DNA of 64,000 nucleotides. Source: Anthoceros angustus. Its lineage: Eukaryota; Plantae; Anthocerotophyta. A program made the position numbers and the translations under genes. The notes beneath the pieces were generated by a model, which was not told the DNA's origin, did no database searches, and saw only the letters and a list, made by a program, of their open reading frames with translations. The DNA is taken from NCBI GenBank assembly GCA_010909165.1, contig VJWM01000173.1, positions 1 through 64,000 on the forward strand, read 5' to 3'. Every line of letters starts with the position of its first letter. Positions within the stretch are counted from its first letter, which is position 1. This document shows positions 1 to 54,947 of this stretch, piece by piece.

Positions 1-459
1 TATGAGCTCACGAGAAAGCGTATTAATGAGCTCAAGGCCAAGGGTGCATTAATGTAAGGAATGCACACAGAAGCGGTGAATAAGGTGAATTATCTCTACA
101 AGAATGGCGGCCCACCGAGAAGAATGCTAACCAGCGATTACCTGCAGTTGCGGGCATAGGCTCAGAGCGTTTTGCGCGCCAAAATGATGCAAACCAGATG
201 CTCACAATGGCTCGCGCGGATCACGAGTATGCTCATGTTCTAATATCAACCCCATTAGAAGCTACCTTCATTACCAAGAAAAGGAAGCCTTGGGCCTCGA
301 GCATCATGATGAACTTCATAATGACATATATTTATGTGGACCCCTCAATCTTTGCCTCACTACTATGGATGGCACCAGGGAGTATACTTCTACCGCTTTT
401 GCATCCTCGATCAGCTGATAAGCCTCATCAATGCCCTTCGGTCTTCCAGATCCGAAGTT

Positions 460-898
460 GCGGTTAAGCCGGATGGTGGATCGACCGGATGGGGGACCGA
501 CTTCCTTGATGAATTTGGAATATCATGTAGCTTTCACAATTACATGCGGAGGATGGATCAAGATTGGATGGGGGACCGACTTCCCTTGATGAATTTAAAG
601 TATCATGTAGCTTTCACACCCCATTACTTGGTTAAGCGGGAGGGTGGATCAGTACCCGGATGAGGGACCTACCTCCCTTGATGAATATAACATATCATGT
701 AGATTTCACACCCCATTACTTGCAGTTAAGTCGAGAGGGCGGATCAGTACCTGAATGGGGGACCGACTTCCCTCCATGAAATTAAAATATAATGTAGCTT
801 TCACACCCCATTACTTGCAGTTAAGCCGGGAGGGCGGATCAGTACCCGGATGGGGGACTGACTTCCATAGATGAATTTAAAACATCATGTAGCTTTCA
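460..898 (+). repeat. Tandem array (~95-bp unit, 5 copies) resembling the 5S rRNA internal control region (A box, intermediate element, C box)
   Basis: The GGATGGGGGACC-type motif recurs at 487, 566, 658, 753 and 848 (periods 79, 92, 95, 95). The unit core GCAGTTAAGCCGGGAGGGCGGATCAGTACCCGGATGGGGGACC aligns by eye to plant 5S GCAGTTAAGCGTGCTTGGGCGAGAGTAGTACTAGGATGGGTGACC at about 34/45 positions. The 5' and 3' stems of mature 5S are missing, so this is not a functional 5S gene. Confidence 0.75.
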
Positions 899-1129
899 AA
901 GTGCCTTGGTTGCTACTTTGGATGTTGTAAGTTGAGAGTATAGATGATTTATTGAGGTGAAAGAACGATGGAAAGAGACCATCTAGGAAGGGACAACAAA
1001 TGGGGACCCGGGGGTCGGAGTGAAGAGGAGCAACTGAGCTCCCTACCTAAAGTGACCAATCGCACCCACAATGTCATATGCGTAGAATAAACGGCCCGCA
1101 AACCATGAGGAAGAGGAAAGGCATCACCC

Positions 1130-4100
1130 ACCGCCGCCGCCTTATGGAGAATCGCCGCTGAGAGCGCCGAAGAGCAATAGAAACCCACTGGCTATGGTAC
1201 GAGAGGACACGCACTATGCCTCACAAGATGGTAAGCTTTGGCACAAGACTTGATGAATTTGTCAAAGTCCTCCCATTGCCCCATACGCTTCTAGAGCAAG
1301 CGGATAAAGAGGTGGCCCGCTTGCATCCTCGCTATACTTATGGACCTTGAGAGCACGCAGCACCACCGGACTGGTGATGACTGAGCGAGGTGGCGCCACG
1401 CAAGAACTACTACATCCGCCACCACAACCGGTCGCCACGGACAAGGTATAAGTCCCCGATTGAACGACCAGTAAGAAGAGTATACTCCGCCTCCTCCAGT
1501 GCCATATAGCCACTTTCAGCAATGGCAAACATGACGCCACGGATGGCGCTGAGTGGCAATGCGATGACTCGTGGGACAACGAGCAAGGTGGACACCGAGA
1601 CGCTAAGAGCGAGCCGCACTCACAAGTGAGGAGCGAAGAAGCCACAGTGGAGTAGGCCGAGACGGAATCGCATCGCAGAGTGAAGGTGGTTGGTGCGGCG
1701 TGAAATCCCGTATGCATGGGCGGGCCAAGAGCTGCACACCGCCTCCCTTCCTGAACAAGAGCAAGCCGCGCCTAGTGGACTGGAGATGGAGGGGTCCCGG
1801 AGGATGACAAAAAGCTCGGCCGAGCCGCTCGAGCAGAGATGCCTGCAATCCCCTAAAGCCATCAGTGATAAATGTAGAGAAAGGAGGGAAGTCCTTCCGA
1901 GCATCCGCGATAACATGTCTCGGCCCGCCTCAAGGACGATTGAGAGAGAAGGTTCCCTCCTCCACACTTGATACGAGATCCTCGAGAAAGGGCTTGTCAT
2001 GGAGGATGAAACGGAAGCCAAGGCAGAGGGCCCAACTCCCAAGAAAGCCGCCGGGAAGAGACCTCGATGAGAGCCCCCACGCTCCAAATTGCAGCAGTGG
2101 GATGCTTGCCGGCTGTCGCCTGTGGCACTCAAAAGCCCCGAGCCCAAGATGTCCCCAAGAGTATCCATAATCAGATCAAACCCCGAGCCGGACAAAAGGA
2201 CCGAGACTGAGGCAACAGAAATGAGGTACCTGCCTAGCAAAAAAGGAAAGGATTCCAAAGGCCACCGAGCATCCTCCAAAGAAAGGGAGGTCTTCAATAT
2301 GGGAGAGGTCCTCGCAAGGGCCTTGTCCAGAAGCTCCCAATGAAGTCTGGGAACCAAAGGGGACCCCAAGAACTGCATCAAGAGCCGAGCAATCTCCCAG
2401 AAAACCGCAGAGTAGGCAGGATCCCCGACGGAGACCAAACGCGGCACTTGGACATCTTGACCTTCAAGCCCACCAACGAAAGCTCGGAAGAGAATATCTC
2501 AAAGGCCTCCTTGACTTTGTCCCCAGGCCCGAGGATGTGAGAATCGTCTGCCAACGAAGGGAAGACACACACATGGGAGAGGGCGGCCCAGACAGGCCCT
2601 ATAGTGAGCAATAGCGAAGAGAGCACCGCCTAGCGGTCGCCTTGCTCGTACTGCGGGCCGATTCCAAGACGAGACGGCGAAACTCAAGAGACGTTTCGCC
2701 GGGTAGTAGAGGTTGGAGGACCTCAGAAGCACCGGACAAAGGGTATAAGACTCTAGACGCCAAAGATCCCTAAGCTCCTCAAAGATGACGCCCGGAAATG
2801 GTATTGAAGGCGTTCTCGACATCCACTGTAAGACTACCCAATCCGGGTGGGTATCAAGGCAAGCTTTCACCCCTAGCACTGCACACAGCCGAGTGGCAAT
2901 GCCAAATTGAAGGGGTTGAAGTGCCTGGAGAAGGGAGCGACGGGCGAGGCGAGTAGCCGCATGAAGGCCTCCCCAACCGCGAGTGGGCGACGCCAGGGCA
3001 GCTTGTCCATAGCGACAAGCCTACTAGCCGCAACAACAAATCCGGTGAGGCATCTCTCCACGAGCCACCGCAGCAGGAGAAAAGAGCTGAAAGCCGCTAG
3101 ATGGATCTTGGGAGAAAGAGGTCCCTAAGGTGTTCGAACACCATTCCCGACAAACCGCATGAAAGACGAGGGGTTGTGGAGAGAGCCAGAGCAAAAGCCG
3201 CCCGGTCCAGGGAGAAGGGATCCTCTGGGACATAGTCGGATATGTCCGGGGAATGGCATCCTTAGGTGGCGGATGGAGGGCACGGAGGGCAGCAATTGTC
3301 TCTTCTGAAGCGGAGGCCAAAGGGACGGGTCGAAGAGCCCTAGCAGCGCGGGCATATTCACCCGCCTGGCCAAGCAACTTGCAGCGGCGTAGGTTTGTTG
3401 CATTACCCCACTGCTCCAACTGGCCGAGTGATTCCGCCGGACTTGGCAAAGACGCACGCCTCCTCAAGAGCCGCCTACCGCCACCAAAACGCAAGACGGC
3501 AACTTCACTGGGAAGCTCCCCTAGTGCAATGAAGACACCATCGGGGGAGAAGAAGGAGGAGACACCAAGCTAACTCATCCCGGGGATCGAGTGCAAGGCG
3601 ATCTAGGGGAAGACGAAATGCCAGACGGGCATCATCGTGAAGGTGCCGAGGAAGCCTGCGGAAGATGCGCGGACATGGAAAGCGGGTTTCGAACATCCCA
3701 AGGATGTGATCCAGCTGACTCCGCAACCATTCCCAGGAAGAAAGAGGCACCACAAGGAGAAAGCTACTGTGCGCCAAAGCCGGGGCAGCGGACGTGGAGG
3801 AGGTCGCAGCGTGCACTTGGGCAGCCCAGGTAGTCTGGTCGAAATCTTTATGCATGTGCCCGAGGTGAGTTTTCACCCCTTGACGCAGAGAGTTGAGCAT
3901 GATCGACAAGGAGTGTCCTCGACCACGGAGGTGTGGATCCCCATTGGATGGGGGACGAAAAGGGCCCGCAAGCGCTTGAAGGGCAGGTCAAGAGGTACCG
4001 GGACCGAGGGCAAATGACCCCTGACCGGACGGACATGTGAGTTTGAGTCGTATGGCGAACCCCAAAAGGCCGCCAAAGGGCCCCACCAAGAGGGGTGCAA

Positions 4101-4262
4101 CCCAGTGACCACCAACCACCAAACTAACGCCCACACTGAACTCAAGACTAAAAGCCGGGCGAGATCCTCAGATAAAGAAGCCCAACCGAAAAGCGATAAG
4201 CAAAGAATCAGAGATGAAAATGGACTCACGAACATGTAATAGAGCTCACAACAATCACACAA
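1130..4262 (-). mobile_element. Degenerate CRE-clade (R2 superfamily) non-LTR retrotransposon: zinc fingers, RT and restriction-like endonuclease
   Basis: Frameshifted minus-strand pieces occur in the expected order: C2H2-like fingers (LTCPSSAC; CRSC...HLGHMH, ~3850-4030), ARAARAL...LRALHP (3024-3494), RPLAVGEAFMRL (2873-3061), VDVENAFNTI (~2800-2830), LADDSHILG (2378-2626), the RLE motif LKVHKY...LYPLALEAYG (1262-1717) and a terminal QWVSIALRRSQ (~1150-1190). Confidence 0.8.
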
Positions 4263-4282
4263 TCAACCGAACCATCAATCAA

Positions 4283-4520
4283 TCGCAAACATCTAGGGCC
4301 TAGCCGCAACACCTAGGGCATAGCACTTCGCAACATCTAGGGCCTAGCATTCACCGCAACACCTAGGGCATAACACTCAACCGCAACATCTAGGGCATAA
4401 CATCAACCGCAACATCTAGGGCCCAAGACGCCCGCAACACCTAGGGCATAACACTCACCAACATCTAGGGCCTAGCATTCAACACACCGCATAACACTCA
4501 ACATCTAGGGCCTAGCCTCC
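4283..4520. repeat. Short tandem repeat (~20-35 bp, core CAACA[T/C]CTAGGGC) just 5' of the CRE coding region
   Basis: About 9 copies of caacatctagggc or caacacctagggc are directly visible. Confidence 0.85.
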
Positions 4521-5039
4521 AAGTAGCCAATATATAAAGATTAACTCGACATGTAATGTAGCACGCACTCAAAGCGCCAATATAATGAGCTTGTAATTGG
4601 ATAACATCCCTTATCTTCACCTCGATTCGAATGTGAAAATATCTTCCCAACCATTGGCTCATTCCATATAGCTTAAGAACCGCATGTCACCCAAGATGTA
4701 CCATGCCTTGTCAATCTTCACTTTATCCTCAAAAGGTTCTATGCCTTCGGATCTTCAATTTATCCGCCAACGACACATATTCCACCGAGGGTTTCAACCC
4801 CTCAACACAAAGATCCTCGGCTCCTTTTAAATAATAAGTTCATATGCTCCCTTGATATATAAGGCTTAACATCTTGAGGATAAAGGAGCCCTAGCCAAGA
4901 TCATTGCCCTCGATGACATAGCATAGAAGCTTTGTGATGGATATATGATATTTGAATATAGTGGAGCTCACATACATCAAGATTGAATATATAGATACGA
5001 GCGAAGAGAGCACCACAAAACCACTCCCAAGATAGGTAC

Positions 5040-5305
5040 TACACAGGAAGGAACACAACTCTCCACGGAAGGAGCACCACCACTCCACGAAGGAACACCA
5101 CCACTCTCATCAGGTGAAGGAGCACCACCACTCTCCACAGAAGGAGCACCACCACTCCCAGGGAAGGAGCACCACCACGGAAGGAGCACCACCACTCTCC
5201 ACTGTGAAGGAGCACCACCACTCCACAGAAGGATCACCACCACTCATGTGAAGGATCACCACCACTCTCCACAGGAAGGATCACCACCACTCTCCCTAGG
5301 AAGGA
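5040..5305. repeat. Minisatellite, ~22-24-bp unit GAAGGAGCACCACCACTC(TC)CAC
   Basis: About 11 imperfect copies are visible. They generate the repetitive ORFs at 4891-5243. Confidence 0.9.
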
Positions 5306-5629
5306 GCATTCATTCTTTCTGAAGTCAATTGGCACCAATTCAGAGAGTAAGTGAAGTTACAACATAGTGTGTTGTGAAGCTCATCGCAAGTCCAAATGTA
5401 CATCATGCCTGACACAAGGCTACACCAAGTTGGTGATCCGGTCTTGCCAACATGCCTGGTTTCCGGCTTGTAGGCGCCTATATGCCAATATTTTATTGTT
5501 CGCGGCCTTGGCTACCATATAGATTCGAACTGGTCCAGACTTAGCTTGGCACATGGGCTTAATGACGCCGCCTTTGTTATCATTATAACAAAATTGAGCG
5601 GAACGCGGGCTTCATTATGGATTCACGAT

Positions 5630-8620
5630 CCCATCCTCACACCCATCCCATCATCTCATCGCTCGGCCATGGGCATTCTTTCGCCATTTTAAAGTTTGGG
5701 GGAAAGCACAACCTCTCAATTCTCACGAGTGGTCGAGTTAACCACCCAGCTTGGCCACGACATGTGCTATCGACTTGCACCAACTTGTGCACTGCTTTGC
5801 CGATTCTTGTTCCTAAGGCGATTGACACACGGGCCGCCAATCACTTGCACTATTTCGGTTGTTGTGGCGACTTGCACCGAGCATGGCGAGTGCCGCGATT
5901 CCGTCTCACGAGGACACGAGTGAGCACTTTGCGGCACCCAAATGCCGGAGGAGAATTTCAAGAGCCCCATGTCCTCTTGAACGAGCAACTCTCACAATGG
6001 GCGAGAGAGTATGGAGAATAAGCACATGCGGAGATGGGCTTTGGTGGCGAAATGCCCAATGCACACCTAAAATGCATGTACTTGGTGCAGAGCATCGGAG
6101 GAAAAAGAAGCACCGGAGGAACAAGGAAAACATTTCACCGAGGCTCAAGCTAAGTGGTGCAAGGACTTGAGGGCCGGTTTATGAGTCCAGTGAATTGTTG
6201 TGCCTTTGAGAGCTGTAATAAGGACTATGCGTCCTTTGCTGGCTCGAAAGGAGGAGAGACATCCCTCCACCGCAAGATGGAAGTAATCCTTGCCTCTTTG
6301 GCCATTTTGCCCAAGGGATCTCCAACCGACAGGCTATAATCACCATCGGAGCCTTGAGGACCCGGATCTCCAAGCTTACTGTGAAGAAACCGATCTCGGA
6401 TGAATCGAATGGATTGGGAGACCTACCGCGGGTGTGATCATCTCTTTCTATCGTAAGTGGTGTATCTTATTTACTTTGACTCCTTTTAGGAAGATCTCAC
6501 TTTTCGATCTATGTGTTTCCTTAGGTGCCATGGAGCTTTACAATCGACACAAACAAAGGCCGAGATTGAGAAACACCGCGTTCCCATTTTGTAACAATGT
6601 GGAGTATGTTTCGAACAGATATGGACATGATGACGTGGACCTCACATGTGTTACCCACCCAAGTAGGGAGAGGGGAGAGACAGATTGACTGGATCCGTTG
6701 AGTCCCGACTAATGCGTGTCCTCATGTTGTCACGAGACTTGGGTTATCATGCCCTCATTTTGGTTTATCGAAATGCACCATTTTGTAGGTTCATAATCCA
6801 CCTCAAAGCATGTGTTTGTTTGACCATCAAGACATGTGAATTGAGGCAAACTGATTTGAAACGCAAACTACAAATGTAGCGCCATTTGTGTGCCTGCCCA
6901 TACAGCCCTGACCTAGCCCTGTCCAAAGATTTTGTTTCTGGATGGATTCGTCGGTATTTGTCCAGCCAATCAAACACTTTTCTAGATGTTTCATGTCTGC
7001 CTTCGGCCCAATCCTCGCATAACAAGAGCATGTGGCAGCTCGTATCAAGTCTTGAACATAATGGGTAAGGTTTTGTTATTGAGGTTTATAACATAAGTTT
7101 ACAGCGTAATATGTTGTAAAGCACATTTTTTTGCATTGTAAAGCACATGTCTTGAGACGTCCGTCACCTTGGGAAGCACGACGGCAAGGCAAACATTTTG
7201 AAACTACGGCTATTGTGGGAGGCACACGTGGGCACACTATGCGTGTTGGAGAGCGCCCTCGAGGTTAAGTGTGATGAGATGAGCCGCGTCTCGAGACGCG
7301 CGTGATGAGACAAGCCCGCTCCAACTCGCCCTGGGGTTGTTAGCGAGGCCATCCCCGAGCCTGCTCGCAATCTCTCCGCCGATCAAGTGGACGATGAAGA
7401 TGAGCACAAGATGTCCATGACTTCTTTGCACCTGGTTTGCAGAAGGACCTAGCGATGGAGGTTGCCGATCAAGTGGATGGCGAAGATGAGCATGAGACGT
7501 CCGTGACTTCTTCTGCAGAGGGTGGTTTGCATCATTAGAGGACTGGCGATGGAGGTTACTAGGAGGACTTGCGCAAGAGGTCGCCTACGAAGTTCCAACC
7601 ATGAGAGTCATAGTGTGCTTGCCCGGATTACTCGCATCGAAGGCGCTTTGAGACCGAGATACGGACTTTAGTGCAGCTTCTCCACCTTCCTTGCCTCATA
7701 CTGACCGAGGTGGACATTGATGAATTTGTCAATCTCCTCGTCGAGGAGGATGTCCTACGAGTCATTTCGCGAGGCCACCGCCATGAATATATTTGAGGTT
7801 TTGGATGGAGTTTGGCTGGAGGAACGTGAACATTTTAGGGAGCTCAAGGAAGCATTGGAGAGGGAAGCAAAGGAGAGGGAAGTCTCAAGAATCCTTGGAG
7901 TCTCGGCACTGGCATGGCAAAAGCTTGGAGATGTTGTGAAGGAATTGTGTGTAGCGTGGGACCGTCATGGGCAGTCCGTGGCAAGGAGCCTTTGGGATAT
8001 GGGTGTCGCTTATTGTTGCATTGTGTAATAAGCGTGTTCCTAATCCACGAGATGATTCACGACACGGTTCATGGGTTTTCGATTTCAAAGTGTCACGTTA
8101 TGTTGAATGAGATAATCAACTGGCATCACATGTGTGTCGCCATTTCTTCTACTCGATCGCAAAACAAGCATCACAATAACCTAATGGCTAACAGGACATT
8201 GTTATGAATCTTCCTTCCCGCCTTCACCCTTTGAAGTAGTCTCGGTGCCTCCTTGAGTGGACCCAAGAGACGCGCTTCATCTCCGACGTCCGCAGCATTG
8301 CCGTTTCTCCTCTGCAGTGATCGGTGATGGCTTACCCGCTGAGGCTGACAGACGGACTCGATCCGCCAAGCATGCGTATGTCTGGTGGTGGCGCTCATCC
8401 CAACTTTCTCCTTCCTCCGCAGATGGCTTGGAGGCACGTTTGGTTTTCTGCTTTCCTTGCTTCGCTTGGTTCTCTTGGTGTGCTCGTGGCCATTGCACAA
8501 CCATACTTGCGCCCGCCTCTCTCATTACGAGGCGCTATCGGTTGGATGACGGTGAAGGCAGCAAGTTCAAGCTTGGCGAGAGGTAGCGATGGATTGCCAT
8601 CTTTGCTAGCTACGGGCCGC
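5630..8620 (-). mobile_element. Degenerate Ty1/copia LTR retrotransposon pol remnant
   Basis: Minus-strand fragments in copia order: a possible gag knuckle (~8300-8400), a pre-integrase-like HGHL piece (7237-7431), RT-like KSL..GLYGQAHKW (6765-7031) and DMKHL (6827-7048), and an RNase H end KLVQVDST...LTRPLVRIERLC (5637-5840). Heavily frameshifted. The LTR pair could not be delimited. Confidence 0.6.
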
Positions 8621-9019
8621 GTGTGAGTGCTCGTGGGTAGCCTAAATCCATATTAGAAAGTCCACATGTTGGATTCATACCATGCCACTTGACACGTGGA
8701 TGTAACCCGTCTATAAATGCAATTTACAATCCTGTATGCTTGCTTGTATACATGCTTGGATACGTATGCTTGAACACACACGCTTGAATACGCTATAGTG
8801 GCACACATGGCTCACTAGTAGAATAAGTCATTTACAACGTCCATAACGCGTGCTTTACAACGCATGAGGTTGTAAAGCACATTTTGACGTAATATGTGCT
8901 CAAAATATACCGTATTGGTATACCGTATCCATATATGGTATACCATATCCATATGGTAATAGGCACATACATGCGACCGTGTGGCTCACCAAGCAAAGAA
9001 ATTGGTGGCTCGCCGCACT

Positions 9020-11499: not shown

Positions 11500-14400
11500 A
11501 CCCTCATGAACAAGTGGCTATAGAGATGGTGGAGGCACTTGGTGGAGTAGCCGTATTGCCGACTTGATGAGGAAGAGGTAAATTCTTTGCCTAAGGAATT
11601 GAAGAGAATGCATACTGCAACCACATCTTTATGGACCGGAGCCAAAACAAATTTGCTGTCATTTACCTTATTATTGCTTAACGTCGGAGGAGGCATTGTT
11701 GGTCGGATGCATCCGTGAATACTATGTTGGAATTAATAGGAGCTTAGGACTCGACAACAAGTTGCCCAAGAATAGAGTGAGATAAGAAAACTATTGAAGG
11801 ATTTGGCCTGTCTTATAAATCTATACATGCTTGTCCAAATGACTTCTATTATTTCATGGCGAGCTACTCGCTAATGTGCTGCAAGTGTGGGGCAAATAGA
11901 TGAACGGATACAAAGGGCAAAAAATACCGTGAAGGTGTTGCGTTATTTCCCATTAATTCCTAGGTTGAAGCAAATGTTTAGGTGCAAGAAGCTAGCTAGT
12001 ATGATGTCTTGGCATGCAACATTTAAGTCTAGTGATGGGATCATAATACCATCGATGACCAAGCGTGGGAATATGTGGACCAAACATTTCCAGAGTTTGC
12101 TATGGAGACGCGCAATATTCGATTTGGGCTTGCTACTAATGGGATTAACCCGTTTGGACACTAGAGTTCTCAATATTCCATTTGGCGCTACTTGTCAATT
12201 ATAACTTGCTCCATGGATGTCCATACGCAATGGACATATATTATTATCAATGATTATTCTGGTCCAAGCAAGTGAAAATGCGACATTTATTTCCGACCGC
12301 TTATTGAAGAGTTGAAGATATTGTGGGAAGAAGGCATAATAGTGGACGATATTTCTGGAGATGGGAATGCTCAAAAACAATTTAGATTAAAAGCCTTATT
12401 GATGTGGACTATGCACGACTACCGTGATATACGGTCACTTCAAAGCTTCAAACCAAAGGGAAGCGGGCATGTCCAAAATGTTGGGATAAACTTGAAGCAC
12501 GATCACCACTAAAAAAATGACGTATGATAAAAATTCTAGAATGCACTTGCAGGAACACAGTTTAGAGTGGAAGAGAAGGACACATTTGATGGACGTCGGA
12601 TCGCAAGTGTTCTTCCGAGCGATGAACCTACGCAGCTATCGAAGAGAGAGTTTTTACGGAAAACCGCAACTAAGGCATCGTTAGGCCTTGGGGTGTCACA
12701 AGCAATGAACCTTCAATTTTTTGGGAGCTTCCATATTGGGAGGTAGGTGTCGATCCCGTTTTTTTATCCTTCACTTTAATATATCATAAAGTGATTATGC
12801 TTTTTAGAACTTTGTAGCACTAAATGCTTACAATTATCATCAATATGCATATGATGGCTGCAGGTGTTGCTAATTAGACACTTGTTTGATATCATTCACA
12901 TTGGAAAGAACGTTAGTGAACAAATTATGAGGCACATTTGTGGGAGTTTGAAACCCTTGCAGTCGAGATCTCGAACTATCAAATACCAAGCAGAATGGTG
13001 GCCCAAGGAGCCCCAACCTAAACCCAAGCCCAAGGGTAGGGCTAGGCTAGGCTAGGGCCATGGGCCATGGCGGCATGCCAAGCCCCAAGCCAAGTATGGG
13101 CCTAGGCCTAGGCAATCAAGGAAAAGGAAGAGAGGACAAGATGATGCATTTGATGAAGGAAACGCCGGGAACGTGTGCATATACTCCAAAGACCTTGGGT
13201 TCTTGGACATGGCACTAACTATTCTTATCCTAAAGCATTGGAGAAATTGAAGAGAAGGGTTTGCAACATCCGTATGCCCACCGGTATGGGTCCAACTTGA
13301 AACGTTGTTTTAAGAAAGGGACACGAGAGACAATTTCAGCAAGTCCCATGATCATCATCATTTGTTATGTGACATATGGCCAATTGCCTTGAGAGGGTTG
13401 ATACATCCACATGTGCATAAGGCTATATGTGATCTCGCTAACTAATGCGTTGGCTTACCGCAAAAAAGAAATTGTGAAGGATGAGATTCTCGCTATGAAG
13501 GTCAAAATTGCGAGGTGATGTGCATTTTGGAGAGAGTTTCCTACAACATTTCGACAAGCCGTCCATGTTATTCATCCGTGCGGAGGTTGAATTATGTGGG
13601 CCCACACGCTATCGTTGGATGTATTTTCTTGAACGACATATGAAAGTGCTAAAGAACCTTGTACGACAAAAAGCTCGACCGGAAGGAAGCATGGCTTTAG
13701 GATATCTAGCACAAGAGACAATGTTTTACTCTTCGAATTCTTTGGAAATATCCATAATGCAGCTCCGGATGTGGACAATGAAAGAAGATGTTACTCAAAG
13801 TGGGAGTTGTTACAAGGATATGGAAAGATAAAGCGCCGGATGTGGAAAGGAGTCAAGTGAGGAAAGTGATATTAGAGAACTGAGTGGACTAAGCAATGGA
13901 AGAAGTATATGATGACAATGAAATCAAGATCGCCTTTTGTGGAGTGGTTAATCGATGAGGTGGAAGCGATCTAAAAGGGGAGTGCATTAGAAATATATGG
14001 AAAGGAGGTGGTTGCACTTGTAAGAGGGCCATTTGAATCAGCGTTCTTATAGCATGATGTGGGCATATGGACATCATATTCAGACGGATCTTGATCTGGA
14101 AACAAACTTGTGATAGCATCATAACACAACTATATACATTTCTATGTATTGAAAACAGGGTGACTCGAACCCATTGCAGCTGTGATGTTGGAACAAGTGG
14201 AGAGGATTTATGAAGTTGATTTTGGAGTTACTACAAATATAAATGTGCTCAAGGTAAAGTGGTTCCACACCGGAATGAGGATAGGACAGAGAGAAAAGAG
14301 ATGACTCCACTGGTATGGTCATGTTGAATCCAAACAAAACGCGTTATCTCAAGAAAAGCTGAAAGACGAACCATTCGTTATGGTATCTCCGAAATTGGAG

Positions 14401-15659: not shown

Positions 15660-18480
15660 ATAGACGTGGGACAAGGAAACAATGCAAAGACATACTTATC
15701 CTTGAAGTAATCTCCGTAGATATTCAAGGAGGCCTTGAGCTTTCTCGGCACATGCTTTGTTAGTAAGAAATGTAATGAGAGCATGAATTCCCTAGAGAAG
15801 TTTAATCACGAAGTAAATTCGACCGGTGAGACGAGTGACTACTGCAGATCCAGAATCGACCAAGGCTAACTAGACGATTAGCAAACTATATGAAGGCATT
15901 AGAATTTCATATGGCCCACAAAAGGCGGAACCACCACCTCCCCATCAAAATCTAAATCCCCAATCTATTCACTAATATACGCTCATTCAAATACCGAAGC
16001 TGAACATATGGGAACTCGAACGATACGATGAGGCGGACTCGAACTATGAGCCTTTTGAACATACTCCCAATTGATTTGTGCACCTTAAAATGCCTTTGTC
16101 ATCCATCTAATTTCCTTGAGTACTTTTGCCAATGGTAGCGATGTAACTATGCCAAGCTATAGCTTGTCTAGCCTTTCTCGACAAAACAAAGATAATCAAC
16201 CTTCCAAGATGAAACGTTAACCCCAACTGTTTTAGTGAAAACCGCTCCCAAAATCACCCTTGTGCCCCAATCTATTCAATACTAATTGCAAGTAGCCTCC
16301 TCGCATCAAACATCCCTTGTTGGCTCTCTATGCAAGGAAAAGGTAGCATCTCCTAGAAGAAACGAGCTCCAATATTGTGCAAGAGATCAAGGGCCGTGTT
16401 GCTTGCCCGACAATATGACCGCCATACAATGGCGCCAAAGACCGACAATGTCTTGCTATACAATGGCGCCTAACGACAATGGCTTGCCATACAATGGCGC
16501 CTAATGCCCGAGAATGGCTTGCCATACAATGGCACAACGCCCAACAATAATGCCCATTAACGCCCAACTATGGCGCCCAATTAACACCCAACAATGGCGC
16601 CCAACGCACAACAATAATGGCGCCCAATTAACGCCCAACTGTGGCGCCCAAATAACGCCTAACAATGGCGTCCAACGCCCAACAATGGCGCCCAATTAAC
16701 GCCCAACAATGGTGCCCAATGCCCGACAATGGCTGGCCATACAATGGTGCCCAAATAACGTCCAACAATAGCGCCAACAATAATGGCGCCCAATGCTCAA
16801 CTATGACACACAATTAACGCCCAATAATGGCGCCCAATGCTCAACTATGACGCACAATTAACGCCCAATAATGGCGCCCAACGCCCAACAATAATGGGAC
16901 CCAACGCTCAACTATGGCGCTCAATTAACGCCCAAAATTGCCCAATACAATATGCCAAATTTAAAATACCCCACCGCTCTCCCGCCTTCCACCCCCATCA
17001 AAACTCTTCCTCGTTATCCCCGCCCCACTTCCCTAAAGGAAAGAGTATGTAGTCGAGAAAGCAACAATGCAAAGACATACTTATCCTTGAAGTAATCTTA
17101 GATTTTCCGAGGAACCGCCTAGAGCTTTCAAACATGCTATACTCTTTGCTAGTAAGAAATGTAATGAGGGCATGAATTTTCTAGAGAAGTTTAATCACAA
17201 AGTAAATTCGGTGAGACGAGCAGTGACTACAAGAAGATCTAATCTAGCCAAGGCTAACTAGATGATTAAAAGACTATATGGAAGCATTAGAACTTCATAT
17301 GGCCCAAAAGGCGAACCGCCACCTCCCCATCAAAATCTAAACCCCAATCTATTTACTAATATACACGATTCAAATTTCCAAGACGCTGAACGTGGGAACT
17401 CGAACATACGATGAGGCGGGACTCGTACTATGAGTCCCTTTTCAACATACTCCCAATTGATTTGTACACCTTACAATGCCTTTGTCATCATGATCCAATT
17501 TCCATGGGTACTTTTGCCAATGGTAGCAGAGTAACCATGCCAAGCTATAGCTTGTCTAGCCTTTCTCTGGATAAACAAAGATAATCAACCTTCCAAGATG
17601 AAAATGTTAACCGTGCTTGCGCCGACAAATATGATCGGCTATACAATGGTGCCGGCCAAGGGCTTGTCAACAATGGCGCCCAACGCCCAACAACAATGGC
17701 TTGTCATTCAATGGTGCCCAACGCCCAACAATAATGGCGCCCAATGCCTAACTATGGCGCCTGTCAATGGCTTGCCATTCAAAGGTGCCCAACGCCCAAC
17801 AATAATGGCGCCTAATTAATGCCTAACTATGGCACCCAATGGCTTGCCATACAATGGCGCCTAACGCCGACAATGGCTTGCCATTTGATGGTGCCCAACG
17901 CCCAACAATAATGGCGCCCAAATAACGCCTAACAATGGCGCCAATGCCCAATTATGGCCCAATTAACGCCCAACAATGGCGCAACGCCCGATGTGGCTGG
18001 CCATAGAATGGTGCCCAAATAACACCCAATAATAATGGCGAATGCCCAACAATGGCGCCTAATGCCCGACAATGGCTGGCCATACAATGGTGCCCAAACA
18101 AATAACGCCCAATAATAATGGCGCCCAACGCCCAACAATGGCGCCCAATTAATGCCCAACAATGGCGCCAACACCAACAATGGCGCCCAATTAACGCCCA
18201 ACAATGGCGCTTAACGCCCAACTATGGCGCCCAATTAACGCCTAACAATGGCGTCCAACACCAACAATGGTACCAAATTAACGCCCAACAATGGCGCCCA
18301 ATTAACGCCCAACAATGGCGCCTATTAATGCCCAACAATGGCGTCCTACTAACGCCTAACAATGGCGCCAAGTAATGCCTAACCAATGGCGCCCGCTTAA
18401 CGCCTCGACAATGGTGCCCAACGCCCAACAATGGCACCCAATTAACGCGCTGGCGCCCGACAATGGCTGGCCATACAATG
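15660..18480. repeat. Internal ~1.4-kb direct duplication (15660-16950 vs 17060-18480); each copy ends in an ATGGCGCCCAA satellite
   Basis: caatgcaaagacatacttatccttgaagtaatct starts both copies (15680, 17065) and colinear similarity continues. GGCGCC-rich ~24-bp unit arrays lie at ~16410-16940 and ~17620-18480. A partial third copy lies at ~15380-15600. Confidence 0.85.
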
Positions 18481-18769
18481 GCCCGCGAAAGGTAAGCATG
18501 TACGAACATGTACCATCGGGCAGGCGCACTTGCTTGTGGGCATAGAGGTGGTACCGCCACAATAAGAACACTAAAGAAAATGCTAAAGAGCGTGACGTAC
18601 TAGTATTAGAGCACTAGCGCCCCTCTCAACTTTTTCCCTCTCCATGCATGTGTGGGGATTAATGGAGTGCGAGCCGCCGAGTGGCACGCCCGCATTTGAA
18701 TGGACGCTCATCATGCCCCCACAAAATAACCCCAATCAAATTTAAAATAGCCTCCCGCCTCACATTTTG

Positions 18770-19470
18770 AAGAAAATGCTTTACAACGTAATCTACAACA
18801 AGGGAATCACGTCATCAATCGTTGTAAATGGCCTCCTATCATATTTTTGTGATTAATAACAATAATAAAGAGTTTAAAAAATAAAGAACACATTTTGAGA
18901 AAATTACTTTACAACGTAATCTACAAGGAGCCATGTCATCAATCGTTGTAAATGGCCTCCTATCATATTTTTGTGATTAATAATAATAATAAAGAGTTAA
19001 ACAAATAAAGAACACATTTTGAGAAAATGTTTTACAACGTAATCTACAACAAGGGAGCCATGTCATCAATCGTTGTAAATGGCCTCCTATCATATTTTTG
19101 TGATTAATAATAATAATAAAGAGTTTTGAAGAAATAAAGAACAAATTTTGAGAAAAAGGCTTTACAACGTAATCTACAACAAGGGAGCCAGTCATCGCAT
19201 GTTGTAAATGGCTTCCAATCATATTTTGTGATTAATAATAATAACAAAGAGTTTTGAAGAAATAAAGAACAAATTTTGAGAAAAAGGCTTTACAACGTAA
19301 TCTACAACAAGGGAGCCACGCATCGCATACCGTTGTAAATGGCTTCCAATCATATTTTGTGATTAGTGATGTTAATAAAGATTTTAGAAAAATAAAGATC
19401 AAATTTTGAAAAAGCTTTACAACGTAATCTACAACGTGGAGCCACGTCATCAATCCGTTGTTGTAAATGA
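18770..19470. repeat. Six ~127-bp subterminal repeats of the CACTA element, each with an inverted TTTACAACG...CGTTGTAAA pair
   Basis: ttacaacgtaatctac occurs at 18781, 18909, 19032, 19162, 19289 and 19417. Confidence 0.9.
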
Positions 19471-26779: not shown

Positions 26780-28680
26780 TGGCCTCCGGAACATCGGTTT
26801 ACTGGGAGAATCGATATCGATCATCGTCCGCGGCGACAAGCTTGCAGGCGGTGCATTGACGGCCATGGGCCAAGGACAACTTTGTCCTTGGGCCATGGCG
26901 ACCTTTGGTGGTGTCGCCCGACGTGAGTAGCGGGGTTTTCGTGGAGGTAAGCATAATTAATAAAAGCAATGCGACATCGAACAAGCATGTGTATAAACCT
27001 TGACAATGGTGCAGCAGATGGAGCGGCCCTAGGATGGCGGCATCACCCCAAGTGCACGCTTTGTAATGACCGGTATGATGACACATATTCATTTCACACC
27101 CACGCTATCCACGATGCACACACCGCTTGCACCGAGGTGCGCTGGGTGACGACACGGAAACGCTGGCCTCGTGGTCACCGGGGATTGTCTTTGGTCCATG
27201 ATGAGTCAATGCATGTCATGGTCCTTGGATTGGGAAATGCCCATGTCCGTGCATGTCATTTGTCCTTCTGCCATGACATGTACATGCATGACATGGTCCA
27301 CGGACATCGCATGACTTGGGCCATGACATGTATATGCATGTCATGGTCTTGACCATGGCATGCATTTACATGTCATGGCCGAACATATATAGTCACGAAT
27401 ATCTCGCTCACACATATCGACGGCCAAGCACATTCACAGGCATTTCGAGGGCCAAGGACAAATGCGACCTCCTGTCATTGCACAAGGATTTATTTGTCCT
27501 TGGGCCTCGACATGCATGCATGCATGTCATGGCCCACGGTGTCATGTCCTTGGCCCATGACATGCATGCATTTACATGTCATGGGCCAAGGACATGATAT
27601 GACCATGACATGCATATGCATGTGATGGTCCAAGGAAACATTTTTCCTTTGACCATGAAATGTATATGCATGTAAATGTCATGCATGACATTTATATAAT
27701 AGGCATGGGCCAAGGACATTTATATAATTGCCATGGGCCAAGGACAAATTTGTCCTTGGGCCATGACATGTATATTACAAGGCGTTTCATGGGCAAGGAC
27801 AACTTTGTCCTTGGCCCATGGCAATGCATGGCATGGTCTTAACCATGACATGCATGTCATGTCCGTGGGCCAAGGACACATTTGTCCTTGGCCCATGACA
27901 TGTACATGCATGGCATGGTGTGGGGACATACATTTTTAGTGAAGGACAAATTGTCCCCGCCCAGACATGTAAATTCATGTCATGGGCGAAGGACAAATTT
28001 GTCCTTGGCCCATGGAAAGGCAAGGCACATATTGGTGTCTATATATGTATAGTAATCGATGAGTGTGGTGTAGACTTCATTTGGGAGGACATGCTATTAT
28101 GAGGACTTAAAACACAAGGAGCGCATGATGAGGTGGCCAAACATGCATGGGGATGGGCCTAGTTGTCATGGGCCAAGGACAACTTTGAGCTTGGCCCATG
28201 ACATGTAAATGCATGGCATGGTCTTAACCATGACATGCATACCATGGGCCAAGGACAAAGTTGTGCTTGGCACATGACATGCATATGGATGTCATGGGGA
28301 AAACTTTGTCCTTCGCCATGACATGCATATGCATGTCGTGGCGGACATGCATATGCATATATATGACATGACATTTATATACATGCCATGGGCCAAGGAC
28401 AAAGTTGTCCTTGGCCCATGACATGCATGTCATGCCAAGGACAACTTTGTCCTTGGCCCATGGCATGTATATAAATGTCATGCATGACAATGACATGTAT
28501 ATACATGACATGGTCCAATGAAAATGTTTCCTTGGACCATGTCATGCATATGCATGTCATGGTCATGTCCGTGGGCCATGACATGTATATGCATGTTATG
28601 GGCGGACATGACATGACCATGGGCCATGACATGGACGATACCGAGGCCCAAGGACAAATAGTTCCTTGGGCAATGACAAG
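26780..28680. repeat. Palindromic satellite CATGGGCCAAGGACAA-N-TTGTCCTTGGCCCATG interspersed with CATG-rich spacers
   Basis: Dozens of half-sites occur in both orientations. A near-perfect 17-bp-arm palindrome lies at 27732-27765. Confidence 0.9.
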
Positions 28681-32427: not shown

Positions 32428-33774
32428 TTAGGATTCATTTGTATCTTCAGAGTTTGATATAGTCGTCACATCTTCAGCTTTTGATTTAGCTTCTGCAAGT
32501 CGGCGATTTGCTTCGATGCATTTTAGAACTTTTGATTTAGCTTTAGCTTGTGCCGAAACGATTGGTTCAGGTTGTTTTTTCAAAGAAACTTGAGTCTTGC
32601 TCCTAACAGATAGGTTTTTAGCTTGAATTTTTCCTGAACCAATTGATGTTGCACTATTATGATTTAAAACAGGTTGTTCCATGTGCTTTGAACAAGACTT
32701 ATGTTCCATACGTCCTGTTGTTGAAGTAAATGTGTTCGAACTACCTAGATGTGGATGTATGAACTTTTCAAGCTTGTCATCGGGGTGTTCCATAGGTCCT
32801 GTTGCTGAAGTAAGTGTCTTCAAACTACTTATATGAGGATGTCTCCACTTTTCAAGCTTGTCATTTGGGTATTCCGTAGGTCCTGTTGCTAAAGTAAGTG
32901 TCTTTGAACTACTAAAATGAGGGTGTCTCCACTTTTCAAACTTGTCATCTGGGTGGTTCACAGGTCCTGTTGCAGAAGTAAGTATCCTCGAACTACCTTG
33001 ATGAGGATGTCTCCACTTTTCAAGCTTATCATTTTGGTGTTCCATAGGTCCAGTTTCTGAAGTAAGTGACTTCAAACTATCTACAATGTCATGAAGATGT
33101 CTCAACTTTTCAAGCTTGTCATCTGGGCATTCCATAGGTCCTGTTGCTGAAGGAAATGTCTTTGAACTACCTATATAAGAATGTCTCAACTTTCCGATCT
33201 TGTCATTTGGGTCTTCCGTAGCTCCTATTGCTGAAGTAAGTGTCCTTGAACTACCCACATGAGGATGTCTCAACTTCTTAACCTTGTCATCTATTTCAGA
33301 AATAATATCTGTCATAACTTTTACATATCTTCCTCGATGGAGTTTTATATTCGAACTATCAATGGGATTAACATTTGAATCTTCTACTAAGTTATCCCAC
33401 TCATAGCTTGTTTGTTCCATAATGTTCTCTAATGTTCCTTTATGAAACAAGAAAAAATCTTCAAATGTTACGGAGCTTCTTTCTTGCTCTTGTGTCTTTA
33501 GATTTTTAAATTTATTTTTTGAAATATCAAACATTGCTTCATATGAAAATATACTTCCTGGGTTCACATGTATACTTTCCTTTACAATATGAAGTAAATT
33601 TTCCTTGATCTTTTGAAAGATTTGAGCATGCAGCACTACATAGTGGTTAGAAATGTTGGCTAACTTGAAAACTTCTTCAGTTGCAAGTAAAAACTTATCA
33701 ACATTCTCTGGTATCAAAGAGTTACTGCGGTTAATGGCATATTCCAATATCCTTTCATGTTTAGATCGCGACAT
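32428..33774 (-). CDS. Intact 448-aa orphan ORF with seven ~28-aa repeats (DDKLEKWRHPHxxSSKTLTSATGPMEHP)
   Basis: An ATG-initiated 1347-nt open frame in AT-rich DNA, where long ORFs are unlikely by chance. The DNA period is 84 bp (ttttcaagcttgtcat at 32765 and 32849). The repeats diverge without disrupting the frame. No family was recognised. Confidence 0.6.
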   Translation of the reverse strand: MSRSKHERILEYAINRSNSLIPENVDKFLLATEEVFKLANISNHYVVLHAQIFQKIKENLLHIVKESIHVNPGSIFSYEAMFDISKNKFKNLKTQEQERSSVTFEDFFLFHKGTLENIMEQTSYEWDNLVEDSNVNPIDSSNIKLHRGRYVKVMTDIISEIDDKVKKLRHPHVGSSRTLTSAIGATEDPNDKIGKLRHSYIGSSKTFPSATGPMECPDDKLEKLRHLHDIVDSLKSLTSETGPMEHQNDKLEKWRHPHQGSSRILTSATGPVNHPDDKFEKWRHPHFSSSKTLTLATGPTEYPNDKLEKWRHPHISSLKTLTSATGPMEHPDDKLEKFIHPHLGSSNTFTSTTGRMEHKSCSKHMEQPVLNHNSATSIGSGKIQAKNLSVRSKTQVSLKKQPEPIVSAQAKAKSKVLKCIEANRRLAEAKSKAEDVTTISNSEDTNES

Positions 33775-38759: not shown

Positions 38760-40060
38760 ATGTGGCAAGTTTGTTGCACTATCTTGCAACGCAAGTTATG
38801 GATTTGTATTATGCTTAGAAATATGCGTTGTCAACTTCCTACCGTGTCATTGTTAAAATACAATAGGTATTTGGATGAGGTCCTAAAATACAACAGGGAT
38901 TTGGGTGAGATCCTAAAATACAATAAGGTTTTGGGAGGGTCTAAATAGCTTAGGCAAATAGACACACATACTTTAAGAACGCCGTAGTTAAGCGCTCTAC
39001 ACTATAAGCGGGATCTAGATGGGGTACCTAGAGAGGAATGCCTCTAGTGCTAGTAGCCTAGTTTACTCCATGGAGCAAGTCGCCCAGAGTACCGAGTCCC
39101 ATAGCGGCATGCCCATCCAAATAATTTATTTGAAGTCCACTTTTAGTGGACTTCAAATAAATTGTTTGTTTGTTTGTTAGCTTGTTGTAAAGTTCGTAAT
39201 GCTATTTTAAAATTGTGAGTTTGTGAGTTGTTGAGATCGTAATTTTCAATTACAACATAGCATTTGGGCAAGTTCGTATCTAATAAACTTCAAAAGTGTA
39301 CTTTGCAACACCCATACCCATTTACTAAAGTTGTGTCCTATGCATGGGATAGATTTAAGAGGCCACTTCATTACCCAAATTTAAAAGTGAAATAATTTCA
39401 GGTTATATAATTATTTATACAAAGATTGAAAAAAATATATGTTTTCAGTATCCGTGGATAATGTGACAATAGGTTTGTGGTTGTGGTTTGAGAGTACAAT
39501 CACATACCCAATACAGTCGGCCTTCCCTAATTGGGAACTCTATACATGGGATTCCTCTCCAAATGGGACCTCCCATCCTACTCCCTTTAGTTTACAATGT
39601 AATAAATGGGACTTTTCCCTAAATGATAATTGGGACCTTTTGAAACATACATTCATGTTAGTTTCACCTCCCTAAATGGGATTTTTAATTTTTTTACTAA
39701 AAAAAGAAAAAAACAGAAAGAAAAAAGAATCAATTATTTCAGAGCACAATAGATTTTTAGGTGTGATTTGAAGACTCTTAAGCTAAGCTTTTTCCTTTAT
39801 GATAGGTAGAGGTTTTGATGTTGCTTAGAGAGAGTGCTAGCTTTCAAACAACTATATAGAGAAGTGGTAAAAGTTATTTTTAGTGAAACCTATCAATCAA
39901 AATTTTAATTTTTTGGGTATTTTTTGATTTTTTAGAATTTATAATATTTTTATGATTTTTAAATAGGGAAAATATAATCGGGACACCTCCCTTAATGGGA
40001 CCTCTAAAGGTACTCCGAACCAGTCCCAATTAGGGGGGGTGTATTTTGGTATACTCACAT
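38760..40060. other. AT-rich island, possible non-autonomous DNA transposon relic
   Basis: Sharp drop in GC. Three ~28-bp repeats at 38856-38945, an inverted 12-mer CCCTAATTGGGA at 39525-39536 and 40024-40035, and repeated AATGGGAC motifs. No TSD was identified. Confidence 0.3.
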
Positions 40061-47149: not shown

Positions 47150-47475
47150 ACTCCTTCGTGCCTGCTCAAGCCTGCCAAACCATTTCTCAGCCTTTTGCTT
47201 ACGCACTTGTGACACAGACAAACTCCACTCCACAATGCCTGCTCAAGCGTACTAAACCATTTCACAGCCTTTGACACAGGAAAATCTCTACGCCACAATG
47301 CTTGCTCAAGCCCACTAAACCATTTCTCAGCCTTCTGCTCACGCACTCGTGTGACACTAGACAGACTGCACGCCACAAAGACAAATTCCACTCCACAATG
47401 TCTGCTCAGGCTTACGTCCTAAACCATTTCTCAGCCTTTTGCTCAAGCCCTTGTGACACAAGACAAACTCCACAC
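47150..47475. repeat. Degenerate ~60-110-bp repeats (TGCTCAAG...AAACCATTTC[T/A]CAGCCTT...TGTGACAC) overlapping the MAPKKK stop codon and 3' UTR
   Basis: aaaccatttc[t/a]cagcc occurs at ~47178, 47255, 47317 and 47421. Confidence 0.8.
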
Positions 47476-54786: not shown

Positions 54787-54947
54787 GGTCTGAGGTCTGA
54801 GGTCTGAGGGCTGAGGTCTGAGGTCTGAGGTCTGAGGTCTGAGGTCTGAGGTCTGAGGTCTGAGGTCTGAGGTCTGAGGTCTGAGGCCTGAGGTCGGAGG
54901 TCTGAGGTCGGAGGTCGGAGGTCGGAGGTCGGAGGTCGGAGGTCTGG
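54787..54947. repeat. Heptamer array (TCTGAGG)n grading into (TCGGAGG)n, ~22 units
   Basis: Directly visible. Confidence 0.98.

What the first reader, a model, noticed from the sequence alone, without database searches (positions are those of the whole stretch)
460..1190. Tandem array of 5S-rRNA-like Pol III internal promoters abutting the 3' end of an RLE-type retroelement
Seen in the sequence: five ~95-bp units, each keeping the A-box-like (GCAGTTAAGC), AGTAC and C-box-like (GGATGGG.GACC) portion of 5S RNA while the remaining 5S sequence is replaced. The array ends about 230 bp from the last coding motif of the CRE element and is antisense to it. Established: R2-superfamily RLE elements are often sequence-specific for multicopy RNA genes (CRE/SLACS in spliced-leader arrays, R2 in 28S), and 5S promoter cores have been captured by Cassandra TRIMs and SINE3. 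Inference: this is a 5S-like target array for a site-specific CRE family, a captured Pol III promoter battery travelling with the element (possibly producing antisense RNA), or a 5S-derived satellite. I see no Cassandra LTR or PBS.
Basis: partly seen in the sequence, partly recalled or inferred. Interest (0 to 1): 0.75.

Follow-up and report, generated by a model that had tools for sequence, protein, structure and literature searches.

The report
Short 5S-promoter-like tandem repeat, plant
A five-unit, 95-base tandem repeat in a land-plant genome carries the three short motifs of the 5S ribosomal RNA gene's internal promoter and nothing else of that gene; it looks like an old, decaying 5S-derived minisatellite beside a badly worn retroelement, and nothing shows it is a working promoter battery or a landing site.

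Summary
The tandem array is real. It has five head-to-tail units of about 95 bp at 455-898, and the units are 73-88% identical to each other. Only units 3-5 carry all three 5S-like motifs (GTTAAGC, AGTAC, GGATGGG.GAC); unit 1 lacks AGTAC and unit 2 lacks the box A motif.

A profile built from 92 Rfam-verified 5S genes matches units 5 and 4 at E 8e-6 and 7e-5 per window, over 5S positions 33-96. Rfam's own 5S model finds nothing even at E 10, and outside the three motifs similarity to 5S is at chance. A 5S origin is therefore probable but not proven, and the match is borderline genome-wide.

Nothing supports promoter function:
- The motifs are no better conserved than the rest of the unit.
- The sense strand has no T4 terminator from 398 to 1500.
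- The units do not fold better than shuffles.

The Cassandra definition is not met (no PBS, no LTR pair). The neighbour on the minus strand shows RT-like motifs in the right order across three frames. Tool support is limited to Pfam RVT_1 at E 0.1, with no relative among 1.84 billion proteins, so "CRE/RLE" could not be confirmed. No unit lies on its other side.

First readers of this scan noted similar 5S-promoter arrays on other pieces of this genome, some apparently in windows that also hold CRE-like elements; these notes are unchecked. I could not fetch sister loci, so co-occurrence remains untested.

The parts
455..531 (+). Unit 1 (worn edge unit): has GTTAAGC and GGATGGGGGACC; AGTAC is lost
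   Evidence: The unit profile built without it matches at E 7.8e-17; alignments
532..620 (+). Unit 2 (worn head): the box A motif is replaced (ATTACAT) and AGTAC is lost; GGATGGGGGACC is kept
   Evidence: the box C-only match to the 5S profile has E 0.15
621..715 (+). Unit 3: GTTAAGC 631-637, AGTAC 651-655, GGATGAGGGAC 658-668
   Evidence: 5S profile E 0.057 over 5S positions 51-94
716..810 (+). Unit 4: GTTAAGT 725-731, AGTAC 746-750, GAATGGGGGAC 753-763
   Evidence: 5S profile E 6.9e-5 over 5S positions 39-96
811..898 (+). Unit 5 (last unit, truncated about 7 nt before the unit end): GTTAAGC 820-826, AGTAC 841-845, GGATGGGGGAC 848-858
   Evidence: 5S profile E 7.9e-6 over 5S positions 33-96
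899..1264 (.). Non-repeat spacer between the array and the last coding-like motif of the neighbour. It could be the neighbour's 3' UTR, but no element end can be defined.
   Evidence: No unit-like match; no T or A run of 4 or more in 899-1264, so no poly(A)-type tail on either strand; folding is not exceptional; the flank's similarity to the unit is not above background
1265..3300 (-). Decayed RT-like coding remnant spread over three frames with many stops. Motifs occur in canonical order: RPLAVGE, QFGIATR, VDVENAFNTISG, QGD, SLADDSHILG, GLKVKMSKC, FLGSPL. A C-terminal part follows: IGDLYLV..., RPVVVADVVV, KVHKYSE...PLALEAYGAMG.
   Evidence: Six-frame translations. Pfam RVT_1 scores only E 0.1 at the ADD box. 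No other tool support.

Best explanation
The array is an old, decaying minisatellite. Its roughly 95-bp founder segment contained the internal control region (box A, intermediate element, box C) of a 5S rRNA gene, a 5S pseudogene, or a 5S-headed repeat of this plant. The segment was amplified to five copies by local tandem duplication (unequal exchange or replication slippage) and has since drifted without homogenisation.

The three promoter motifs survive because all copies inherited them, not because they are used. Each unit lacks the rest of the 5S gene, a terminator and a stable fold. Sitting next to the worn reverse-transcriptase remnant is most likely coincidence in a repeat-rich region.

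Shown: the array, the motif triad in 5S order and near-5S spacing, and the absence of preferential conservation, terminator and structure. Inferred: the 5S ancestry, the duplication mechanism and the lack of function.
For: - TRF: period 95, 85% matches. Five units are recovered by the profile. Pairwise identity is 73-88%.
- A 5S profile from 92 distinct genes, a subset of whose source loci was verified by Rfam at 56-121 bits, hits u5 at E 7.9e-6, u4 at 6.9e-5 and u3 at 0.057, all over 5S positions 33-96. The next non-array hit in the window has E 0.59.
- Rfam's curated consensus itself shows guUAAGc, AGuAc and gGgUGgGuGAcC, so the anchors are general 5S features.
- Spacing from box A to IE is 14 nt against 16 in all 120 true 5S hits.
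- Outside the anchors there is no similarity above shuffles.
- Boxes have mean pairwise identity 0.70 against 0.735 for the rest of the unit, permutation p 0.76.
- No T4 run on the + strand between 398 and 1500.
- Fold z-scores lie between -0.9 and +0.7 on both strands.
- No other unit copy in the 64 kb.
- 5S-derived tandem repeats are a known kind: PcP190 in frogs (PMC11675491) and Cassandra arrays in plants (PMC7215508).
Against: - Rfam RF00001 gives no hit at gathering score, nor at E 10 on 1 kb or on a single unit.
- The reference 5S set was fetched with a pattern partly shaped by the unit, so the profile E-value is somewhat optimistic.
- At 8e-6 per window the match is only borderline once about 2000 windows of this genome are considered.
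- Against the independently published Cassandra/5S box query the units have 5 mismatches, which is chance level (about 8 such sites per simulated window). True non-vascular 5S genes also score 3-4 mismatches there.
- The species' own 5S gene was not available.
- First-reader notes on other pieces of this genome list tandem 5S-promoter arrays with ids next to those of CRE-like elements. If that holds, the adjacency is not a coincidence.
Confidence: 0.55

Rival explanations
1. Chance resemblance. The array is an ordinary minisatellite whose unit happens to contain three short motifs like those of the 5S internal control region.
For: No Rfam hit at any threshold. No similarity beyond 23 anchor bases. 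Chance-level fit to the published box A/box C query. The finding was picked from a very large number of windows, so an E of 1e-5 per window is not decisive.
Against: All 23 anchor bases are in the right order with spacing off by only 2 nt. The 5S profile gives E 7.9e-6, while the best hit elsewhere in the window is E 0.59. The window holds a second, independent 5S-like head at 38960-39120, so 5S-derived sequence does circulate in this genome.
Confidence: 0.2
2. The array is an internal part of a mobile element. It could be the 3' region of the neighbouring CRE-like retroelement, carried antisense, or a tandem-repeat module of a DNA transposon or SINE-like element, and it travels with that element.
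For: The array lies within about 365 bp of the last coding-like motif of the RT remnant, with no recognisable element end in between. Unchecked first-reader notes on other pieces report 'DNA transposon carrying three tandem 5S internal promoters' and 'tandem array of 5S internal promoters', with ids adjacent to notes on CRE-like elements. Tandem repeats also sit on the other side of the remnant at 4282-4493 and 5038-5294.
Against: No second copy of the unit or of the RT remnant exists in the 64 kb. The CACTA-type transposon in the window has its own subterminal motif, first seen at about 7.1 kb, well to the right of the array. The Cassandra PBS and LTR pair are absent. Units abut directly, without SINE tails or target duplications. 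The SINE-like head at 38.96 kb is unrelated to the unit by profile.
Confidence: 0.15
3. The array is the target of a site-specific RLE retroelement that inserted into or beside it, as R2 does in 28S rDNA or CRE/SLACS do in spliced-leader genes.
For: [quoted passage not shown] The remnant abuts the array.
Against: The RLE identity is unverified. A target-specific insertion should leave target sequence on both sides, but no unit lies beyond the remnant. Five worn units are a poor multicopy target. First-reader notes list CRE-like copies next to many different things (unchecked).
Confidence: 0.05
4. The units are working Pol III promoters (TFIIIA/TFIIIC entry sites) that produce read-through or antisense RNA across the neighbouring element.
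For: Units 3-5 keep box A, IE and box C in 5S order. From my own recall of Pieler et al. 1987, not checked here, the 5S control region tolerates some spacing change between box A and IE/box C.
Against: The boxes are not better conserved than the rest of the unit. There is no terminator for more than 600 bp downstream. Units 1 and 2 have lost boxes. There is no RNA structure.
Confidence: 0.05

Closest known systems
5S rDNA-derived satellite DNAs (PcP190 of frogs, PMC11675491 and PMC4201667; 5SHindIII of the wolf fish, cited in PMC11369246)
   Same: They are head-to-tail tandem repeats outside the 5S rDNA, and their unit contains a recognisable piece of the 5S gene next to unrelated sequence.
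   Different: Those satellites keep most of the 120-nt transcribed region, have units of about 190-360 bp and run to hundreds or thousands of copies. This array keeps only the control-region motifs, has a unit shorter than a 5S gene (95 bp) and has five copies at this locus. The host is a non-seed land plant.
Cassandra TRIM retrotransposons of vascular plants (PMC7215508, PMC12486564, PMC10946416)
   Same: A plant repeat carrying 5S box A and box C. Cassandra can also occur in tandem arrays.
   Different: Cassandra arrays alternate LTR and internal domain. This locus has no PBS TGGTATCAGAGC and no LTR pair, and its boxes differ from the Cassandra consensus at 2-3 positions each. Cassandra 5S domains carry a terminator (PMC12486564); these units do not.
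5S-derived SINEs (SINE3 and relatives; said to be unknown in plants in PMC10946416)
   Same: Only the 5S promoter part is kept and it is joined to foreign sequence.
   Different: SINEs are dispersed single copies with a LINE-type tail and target duplications. These units abut each other, have no tail, and are not related by profile to the SINE-like head at 38960-39120.
RLE-type site-specific non-LTR retrotransposons (CRE, R2, R4, NeSL; PMC4640811)
   Same: This applies to the neighbour only. By eye it has RT motifs followed by a C-terminal region with PD..D..K-like spacing, and it lies next to a repeat.
   Different: No tool confirms the RT class or the endonuclease. No target sequence lies on the far side. 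The copy is too decayed to place in any clade.

Membership tests
5S rRNA gene (Rfam RF00001) | Covariance-model score at or above the gathering score (38 bits) | tested here: not met
   No hit at gathering score or at E up to 10 on 1 kb and on one unit. True 5S genes score 56-121 bits with the same tool.
5S rRNA gene (Rfam RF00001) | Internal control region: box A, intermediate element and box C in order and spacing | tested here: met
   Units 3-5 carry GTTAAG[C/T], AGTAC and G[G/A]ATG[G/A]GGGAC. Spacing is 14 nt against 16, then 2 nt as in 5S. Units 1 and 2 have lost one or two boxes.
5S rRNA gene (Rfam RF00001) | Full 120-nt RNA with helices I-V and a downstream T-run terminator | tested here: not met
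   Only 5S positions 33-96 align. Flanking parts are at chance. Folding is no better than shuffles. There is no T4 on the + strand from 398 to 1500.
Cassandra TRIM | Box A RGTTAAGYRHGY, 15-25 nt, box C RRRATRGGTRACY (Kalendar 2020, PMC7215508) | tested here: not met
   Units fit with 2-3 mismatches per box and 5 in total, which is chance level for the window. The query is also imperfect for true non-vascular 5S genes (3-4 mismatches).
Cassandra TRIM | PBS TGGTATCAGAGC 5-200 nt after box C | tested here: not met
   No match with up to 2 mismatches within 16 kb of the array.
Cassandra TRIM | Two LTRs flanking a short internal domain | tested here: not met
   No direct repeat other than the 95-bp units around the locus. 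The left side is cut by the window start at 455 bp, so an LTR extending further left cannot be excluded.
5S-derived SINE | Dispersed copies with a LINE-derived or simple-repeat tail and target-site duplication | tested here: not met
   Units abut head to tail without tails. There are no dispersed copies in the 64 kb. The genome-wide count is not testable here.
5S-derived satellite or minisatellite | Head-to-tail tandem units containing 5S-derived sequence, outside the rDNA | tested here: met
   TRF period 95. 5S profile E 8e-6 to 0.06 for three units. There is no true 5S gene in the window. The 5S ancestry is probable rather than proven.
5S-derived satellite or minisatellite | High copy number or long arrays | not testable with these tools
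   There are five units here. The single metagenome scan returned only true 5S genes, and the window's ORFs are not in the protein collection, so other loci could not be fetched.
RLE-type (CRE-clade) non-LTR retrotransposon (the neighbour) | Reverse-transcriptase domain | tested here: inconclusive
   Canonical motif order is visible by eye over three frames. Pfam RVT_1 scores only E 0.1 at the ADD box. Nothing came from the word search, the 1.84-billion-protein HMMER search, PDB or the atlas.
RLE-type (CRE-clade) non-LTR retrotransposon (the neighbour) | C-terminal CCHC plus PD-(D/E)XK restriction-like endonuclease | tested here: inconclusive
   Motif-like strings are seen by eye at 1265-1620. 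There is no Pfam, PDB or atlas support.
RLE-type (CRE-clade) non-LTR retrotransposon (the neighbour) | Target sequence on both sides of the insertion at a fixed site | tested here: not met
   No unit-like sequence lies right of the remnant. Whether the junction is fixed across copies is not testable here.

The most novel reading that the evidence does not exclude
In this deep-branching land plant, short tandem batteries of 5S-type internal promoters are a recurrent partner of CRE-like RLE retroelements. They would be either the elements' preferred landing site or an antisense Pol III module carried at their 3' end. That would be a new kind of link between Pol III promoter repeats and a retroelement clade not established in land plants.
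Probability: 0.08. Interest if true: 0.7.

Novelty: new member of a known kind. Interest (0 to 1): 0.25.

Why it matters
Taken alone, this locus is a small, worn repeat of little consequence. Its value is as one data point in a wider pattern the scan keeps meeting in this genome: pieces of the 5S gene's internal promoter turning up in several kinds of repeats (SINE-like heads, tandem arrays). This is a plant lineage where a 2024 review states that no 5S-derived SINEs are known in plants (PMC10946416) and where the papers I read report Cassandra only from vascular plants (PMC7215508, PMC10946416). If a genome-wide tally showed that such arrays recur and are tied to one retroelement family, it would bear on how Pol III promoters are captured and spread. 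If not, this is ordinary repeat decay.

Tried and rejected
- Rfam at gathering score and at E 10, on 64 kb, 1 kb and 101 nt: no 5S hit.
- Viral-contig scan with the core pattern: nothing.
- The one metagenome scan returned 120 true 5S genes, all with 16-nt spacing, and no relative of the unit.
- Exact look-up of ten window ORFs in the protein collection: none present.
- Retroelement identity: Pfam on 21 pieces, two word searches, the exhaustive HMMER search, six PDB sequence searches and two atlas searches. The only signal was RVT_1 at E 0.1.
- Self-comparison of 1-6500 against the rest of the window by blastn and tblastx: nothing.
- CACTA-end hypothesis: rejected, because that element's own subterminal motif is first seen at about 7.1 kb.
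- tRNA-type origin: no tRNA-like gene.
- Extra 5S sequence in edge unit 1, and 5S similarity upstream or downstream of the anchors: not above shuffles.
- Inverted copy of the unit tail at 903-933, a possible terminal hairpin: fold z is -2.1, but the similarity is not above background.
- Left flank 1-455: no domain.
- Relation to the SINE-like head at 38.96 kb: none by profile.
Full report
OBSERVATION. Tandem Repeats Finder reports a period-95 array at 566-898 (3.5 copies, 85% matches). Alignment of successive 95-bp slices and a profile built from units 2-5 show five head-to-tail units: u1 455-531, u2 532-620, u3 621-715, u4 716-810 and u5 811-898. Unit 1 was not used to build the profile and is still recovered at E 7.8e-17. 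Pairwise identity among units is 73-88%. The 27-nt core occurs three times within 3 mismatches, against none in 100 shuffles. Neither the core nor the unit occurs anywhere else in the 64 kb. The claim that each unit keeps all three motifs is too strong. Units 3-5 have GTTAAG[C/T], AGTAC and the GGATGGGGGAC-type motif; unit 1 has lost AGTAC and unit 2 has lost the box A motif. The array ends at about 898, roughly 365 bp from the last coding-like motif of the neighbour, not 230.

IS IT 5S-LIKE? Rfam's 5S model finds nothing, at gathering score on the window or at E up to 10 on 1 kb and on a single unit. To get real 5S genes by reference, I scanned the metagenome collection with a degenerate core pattern. 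It returned 120 loci, all with a 16-nt spacer between GTTAAGC and AGTAC, where the unit has 14. In a subset of 20 of these loci, Rfam scored the 5S genes at 56-121 bits. A profile HMM of 92 distinct genes searched against the whole window hits u5 at E 7.9e-6 (5S positions 33-96), u4 at 6.9e-5 and u3 at 0.057. The best hit outside the array has E 0.59.

Two caveats apply. First, the reference set was fetched with a pattern that I shaped knowing the unit. Against that, Rfam's own consensus line shows guUAAGc, AGuAc and gGgUGgGuGAcC, so the anchors are general 5S features. Second, 8e-6 per window is only borderline across the roughly 2000 windows of this genome. Outside the three anchors the unit is no more like 5S than shuffles are: upstream, between the boxes and downstream, and with local alignment of the upstream part, including edge unit 1. 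An independently published yardstick, the linked box A/box C query of Kalendar et al. 2020 (PMC7215508), gives 5 mismatches for the units. That is chance level, about 8 such sites per simulated window. The same query also misses true 5S genes from other lineages by 3-4 positions, so it has little power here. My reading is that a 5S origin of the core is probable (about 0.7-0.8) but not proven.

IS IT A WORKING PROMOTER BATTERY? Nothing says so.
- The 22 box columns have mean pairwise identity 0.70 against 0.735 for the other 65 columns (permutation p 0.76). The motifs persist by common descent of the copies, not by visible selection.
- The sense strand has no run of four or more T from 398 to 1500. 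Cassandra 5S domains and true 5S genes do carry terminators (PMC12486564).
- No unit folds better than its shuffles on either strand (z from -0.9 to +0.7).
- No tRNA-like gene is present.

WHAT IS NEXT TO IT? Six-frame translation of the minus strand shows, spread over three frames with many stops, the canonical order of non-LTR RT motifs between about 3000 and 2370: RPLAVGE, QFGIATR, VDVENAFNTISG, QGD, SLADDSHILG, GLKVKMSKC, FLGSPL. A C-terminal stretch follows at about 1620-1265 (IGDLYLV, RPVVVADVVV, KVHKYSE..PLALEAYGAMG) that resembles the spacing of a PD..D..K nuclease. This is read directly from the sequence. Tool support is minimal. Pfam gives RVT_1 at E 0.1 on the ADD piece and nothing else. 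The word search found nothing for two pieces. The exhaustive HMMER search of the 292-aa open piece against 1.84 billion representatives found no protein at E 0.001. Six PDB sequence searches and two atlas searches gave nothing relevant. The neighbour is therefore probably a very old non-LTR remnant, but its assignment to the CRE clade or to RLE-type elements is unconfirmed. No second copy exists in the window.

IS THE ADJACENCY MEANINGFUL? RLE clades are mostly target-specific (PMC4640811), so the idea was worth testing. Here no unit-like sequence lies on the far side of the remnant. The 365-bp spacer has no tail, and its fold is unremarkable. An apparent inverted copy of the unit tail at 903-933 is not above background. 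The array is not an end of the CACTA-type transposon in the window (DUF4218, E 4.8e-16, at 13499-13828), because that element's own subterminal motif is first seen at about 7.1 kb.

Unchecked first-reader notes on other pieces of this genome mention 'tandem array of 5S rRNA internal promoters outside rDNA' (s1-662855), 'DNA transposon carrying three tandem 5S-rRNA internal promoters' (s1-313423) and 5S cassettes in a satellite (s1-655723). Two of these have ids adjacent to notes on CRE-like elements (s1-662857, s1-313431). Other notes put CRE-like copies beside many unrelated things. These are leads only, and they keep a recurrent association alive at low probability.

HOST. The window carries callose synthase exons and a MAPKKK-type kinase. 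The kinase's best relatives are lycophyte, liverwort and moss proteins at 50-58% identity. The host is thus a land plant from a lineage poorly represented in protein databases. This is compatible with the hornwort guess of earlier agents, but I have not shown it.

COMPARISON AND VERDICT. The closest known kind is the 5S-derived satellite (PcP190, PMC11675491; 5SHindIII). This array shares the tandem, extra-rDNA organisation. It differs in keeping only the control-region motifs, in a unit shorter than a 5S gene, and in having just five copies. It is not a Cassandra: no PBS, no LTR pair, boxes off consensus. It is not a SINE: no tails, not dispersed, and unrelated by profile to the SINE-like head at 38960-39120.

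Best explanation (0.55): a decaying 5S-control-region-derived minisatellite, made by local tandem duplication and lying by coincidence next to a worn retroelement.

Rivals:
- chance resemblance, 0.2
- part of a mobile element, 0.15
- RLE target, 0.05
- active Pol III battery, 0.05

Interest is low for this locus alone. The wider question of 5S promoter modules in this genome's repeats is better addressed with a genome-wide tally.

Noticed in passing
window 38960-39120 (+): A single 5S-like head (…AGAACGCCGTAGTTAAGCGC…GGGATCTAGATGGGGTACC…). It has 4 mismatches to the published box A/box C query, the same range as true 5S genes. It is not related to the 95-bp unit by profile. It is probably a copy of the 5S-headed SINE that earlier agents described in this genome.
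   Followed up: partly
window 11875-13828 (+), with motifs at 7098-7130, 8850-8879 and 18770-19392: A CACTA/En-Spm-type transposase fragment (Pfam DUF4218, E 4.8e-16, at 13499-13828). 'TTGTAAAGCAC' motifs lie in inverted orientation on both sides, and 124-130-bp tandem repeats lie at 18766-19392. This is probably one large DNA transposon.
   Followed up: partly
window 4282-4493 and 5038-5294: A 26-bp minisatellite (CCGCAACAYCTAGGGCATAACACTCA) and a 22-bp minisatellite (ACTCCACGGAAGGAGCACCACC) lie on the presumed 5' side of the RT remnant. They might be 5' monomers of that element or independent repeats.
   Followed up: no
window 47357-49417 (-): An intact 686-aa single-exon MAPKKK17/18-type kinase. 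Its best relatives are in lycophytes, liverworts and mosses at only 50-58% identity.
   Followed up: partly
window 61571-62419 and 63015-63998 (-): Callose synthase (1,3-beta-glucan synthase) exons, E 5e-31 and 1e-91. The gene runs off the window end.
   Followed up: no
window 32428-33774 (-): A 448-aa ORF with no Pfam domain that contains an 84-bp tandem repeat (32665-33292, five copies).
   Followed up: no
window 16400-18400: Dense 22-47-bp repeats rich in CAATGGCGCCCAA, in two blocks 1388 bp apart, flanked by duplicated 60-75-bp segments (15755-16179 and 17144-17567).
   Followed up: no
window 27271-28446 and 54756-54963: Palindrome-rich CCATGACATG repeats at the first site, and a GGTCTGA 7-bp microsatellite of about 30 copies at the second.
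   Followed up: no
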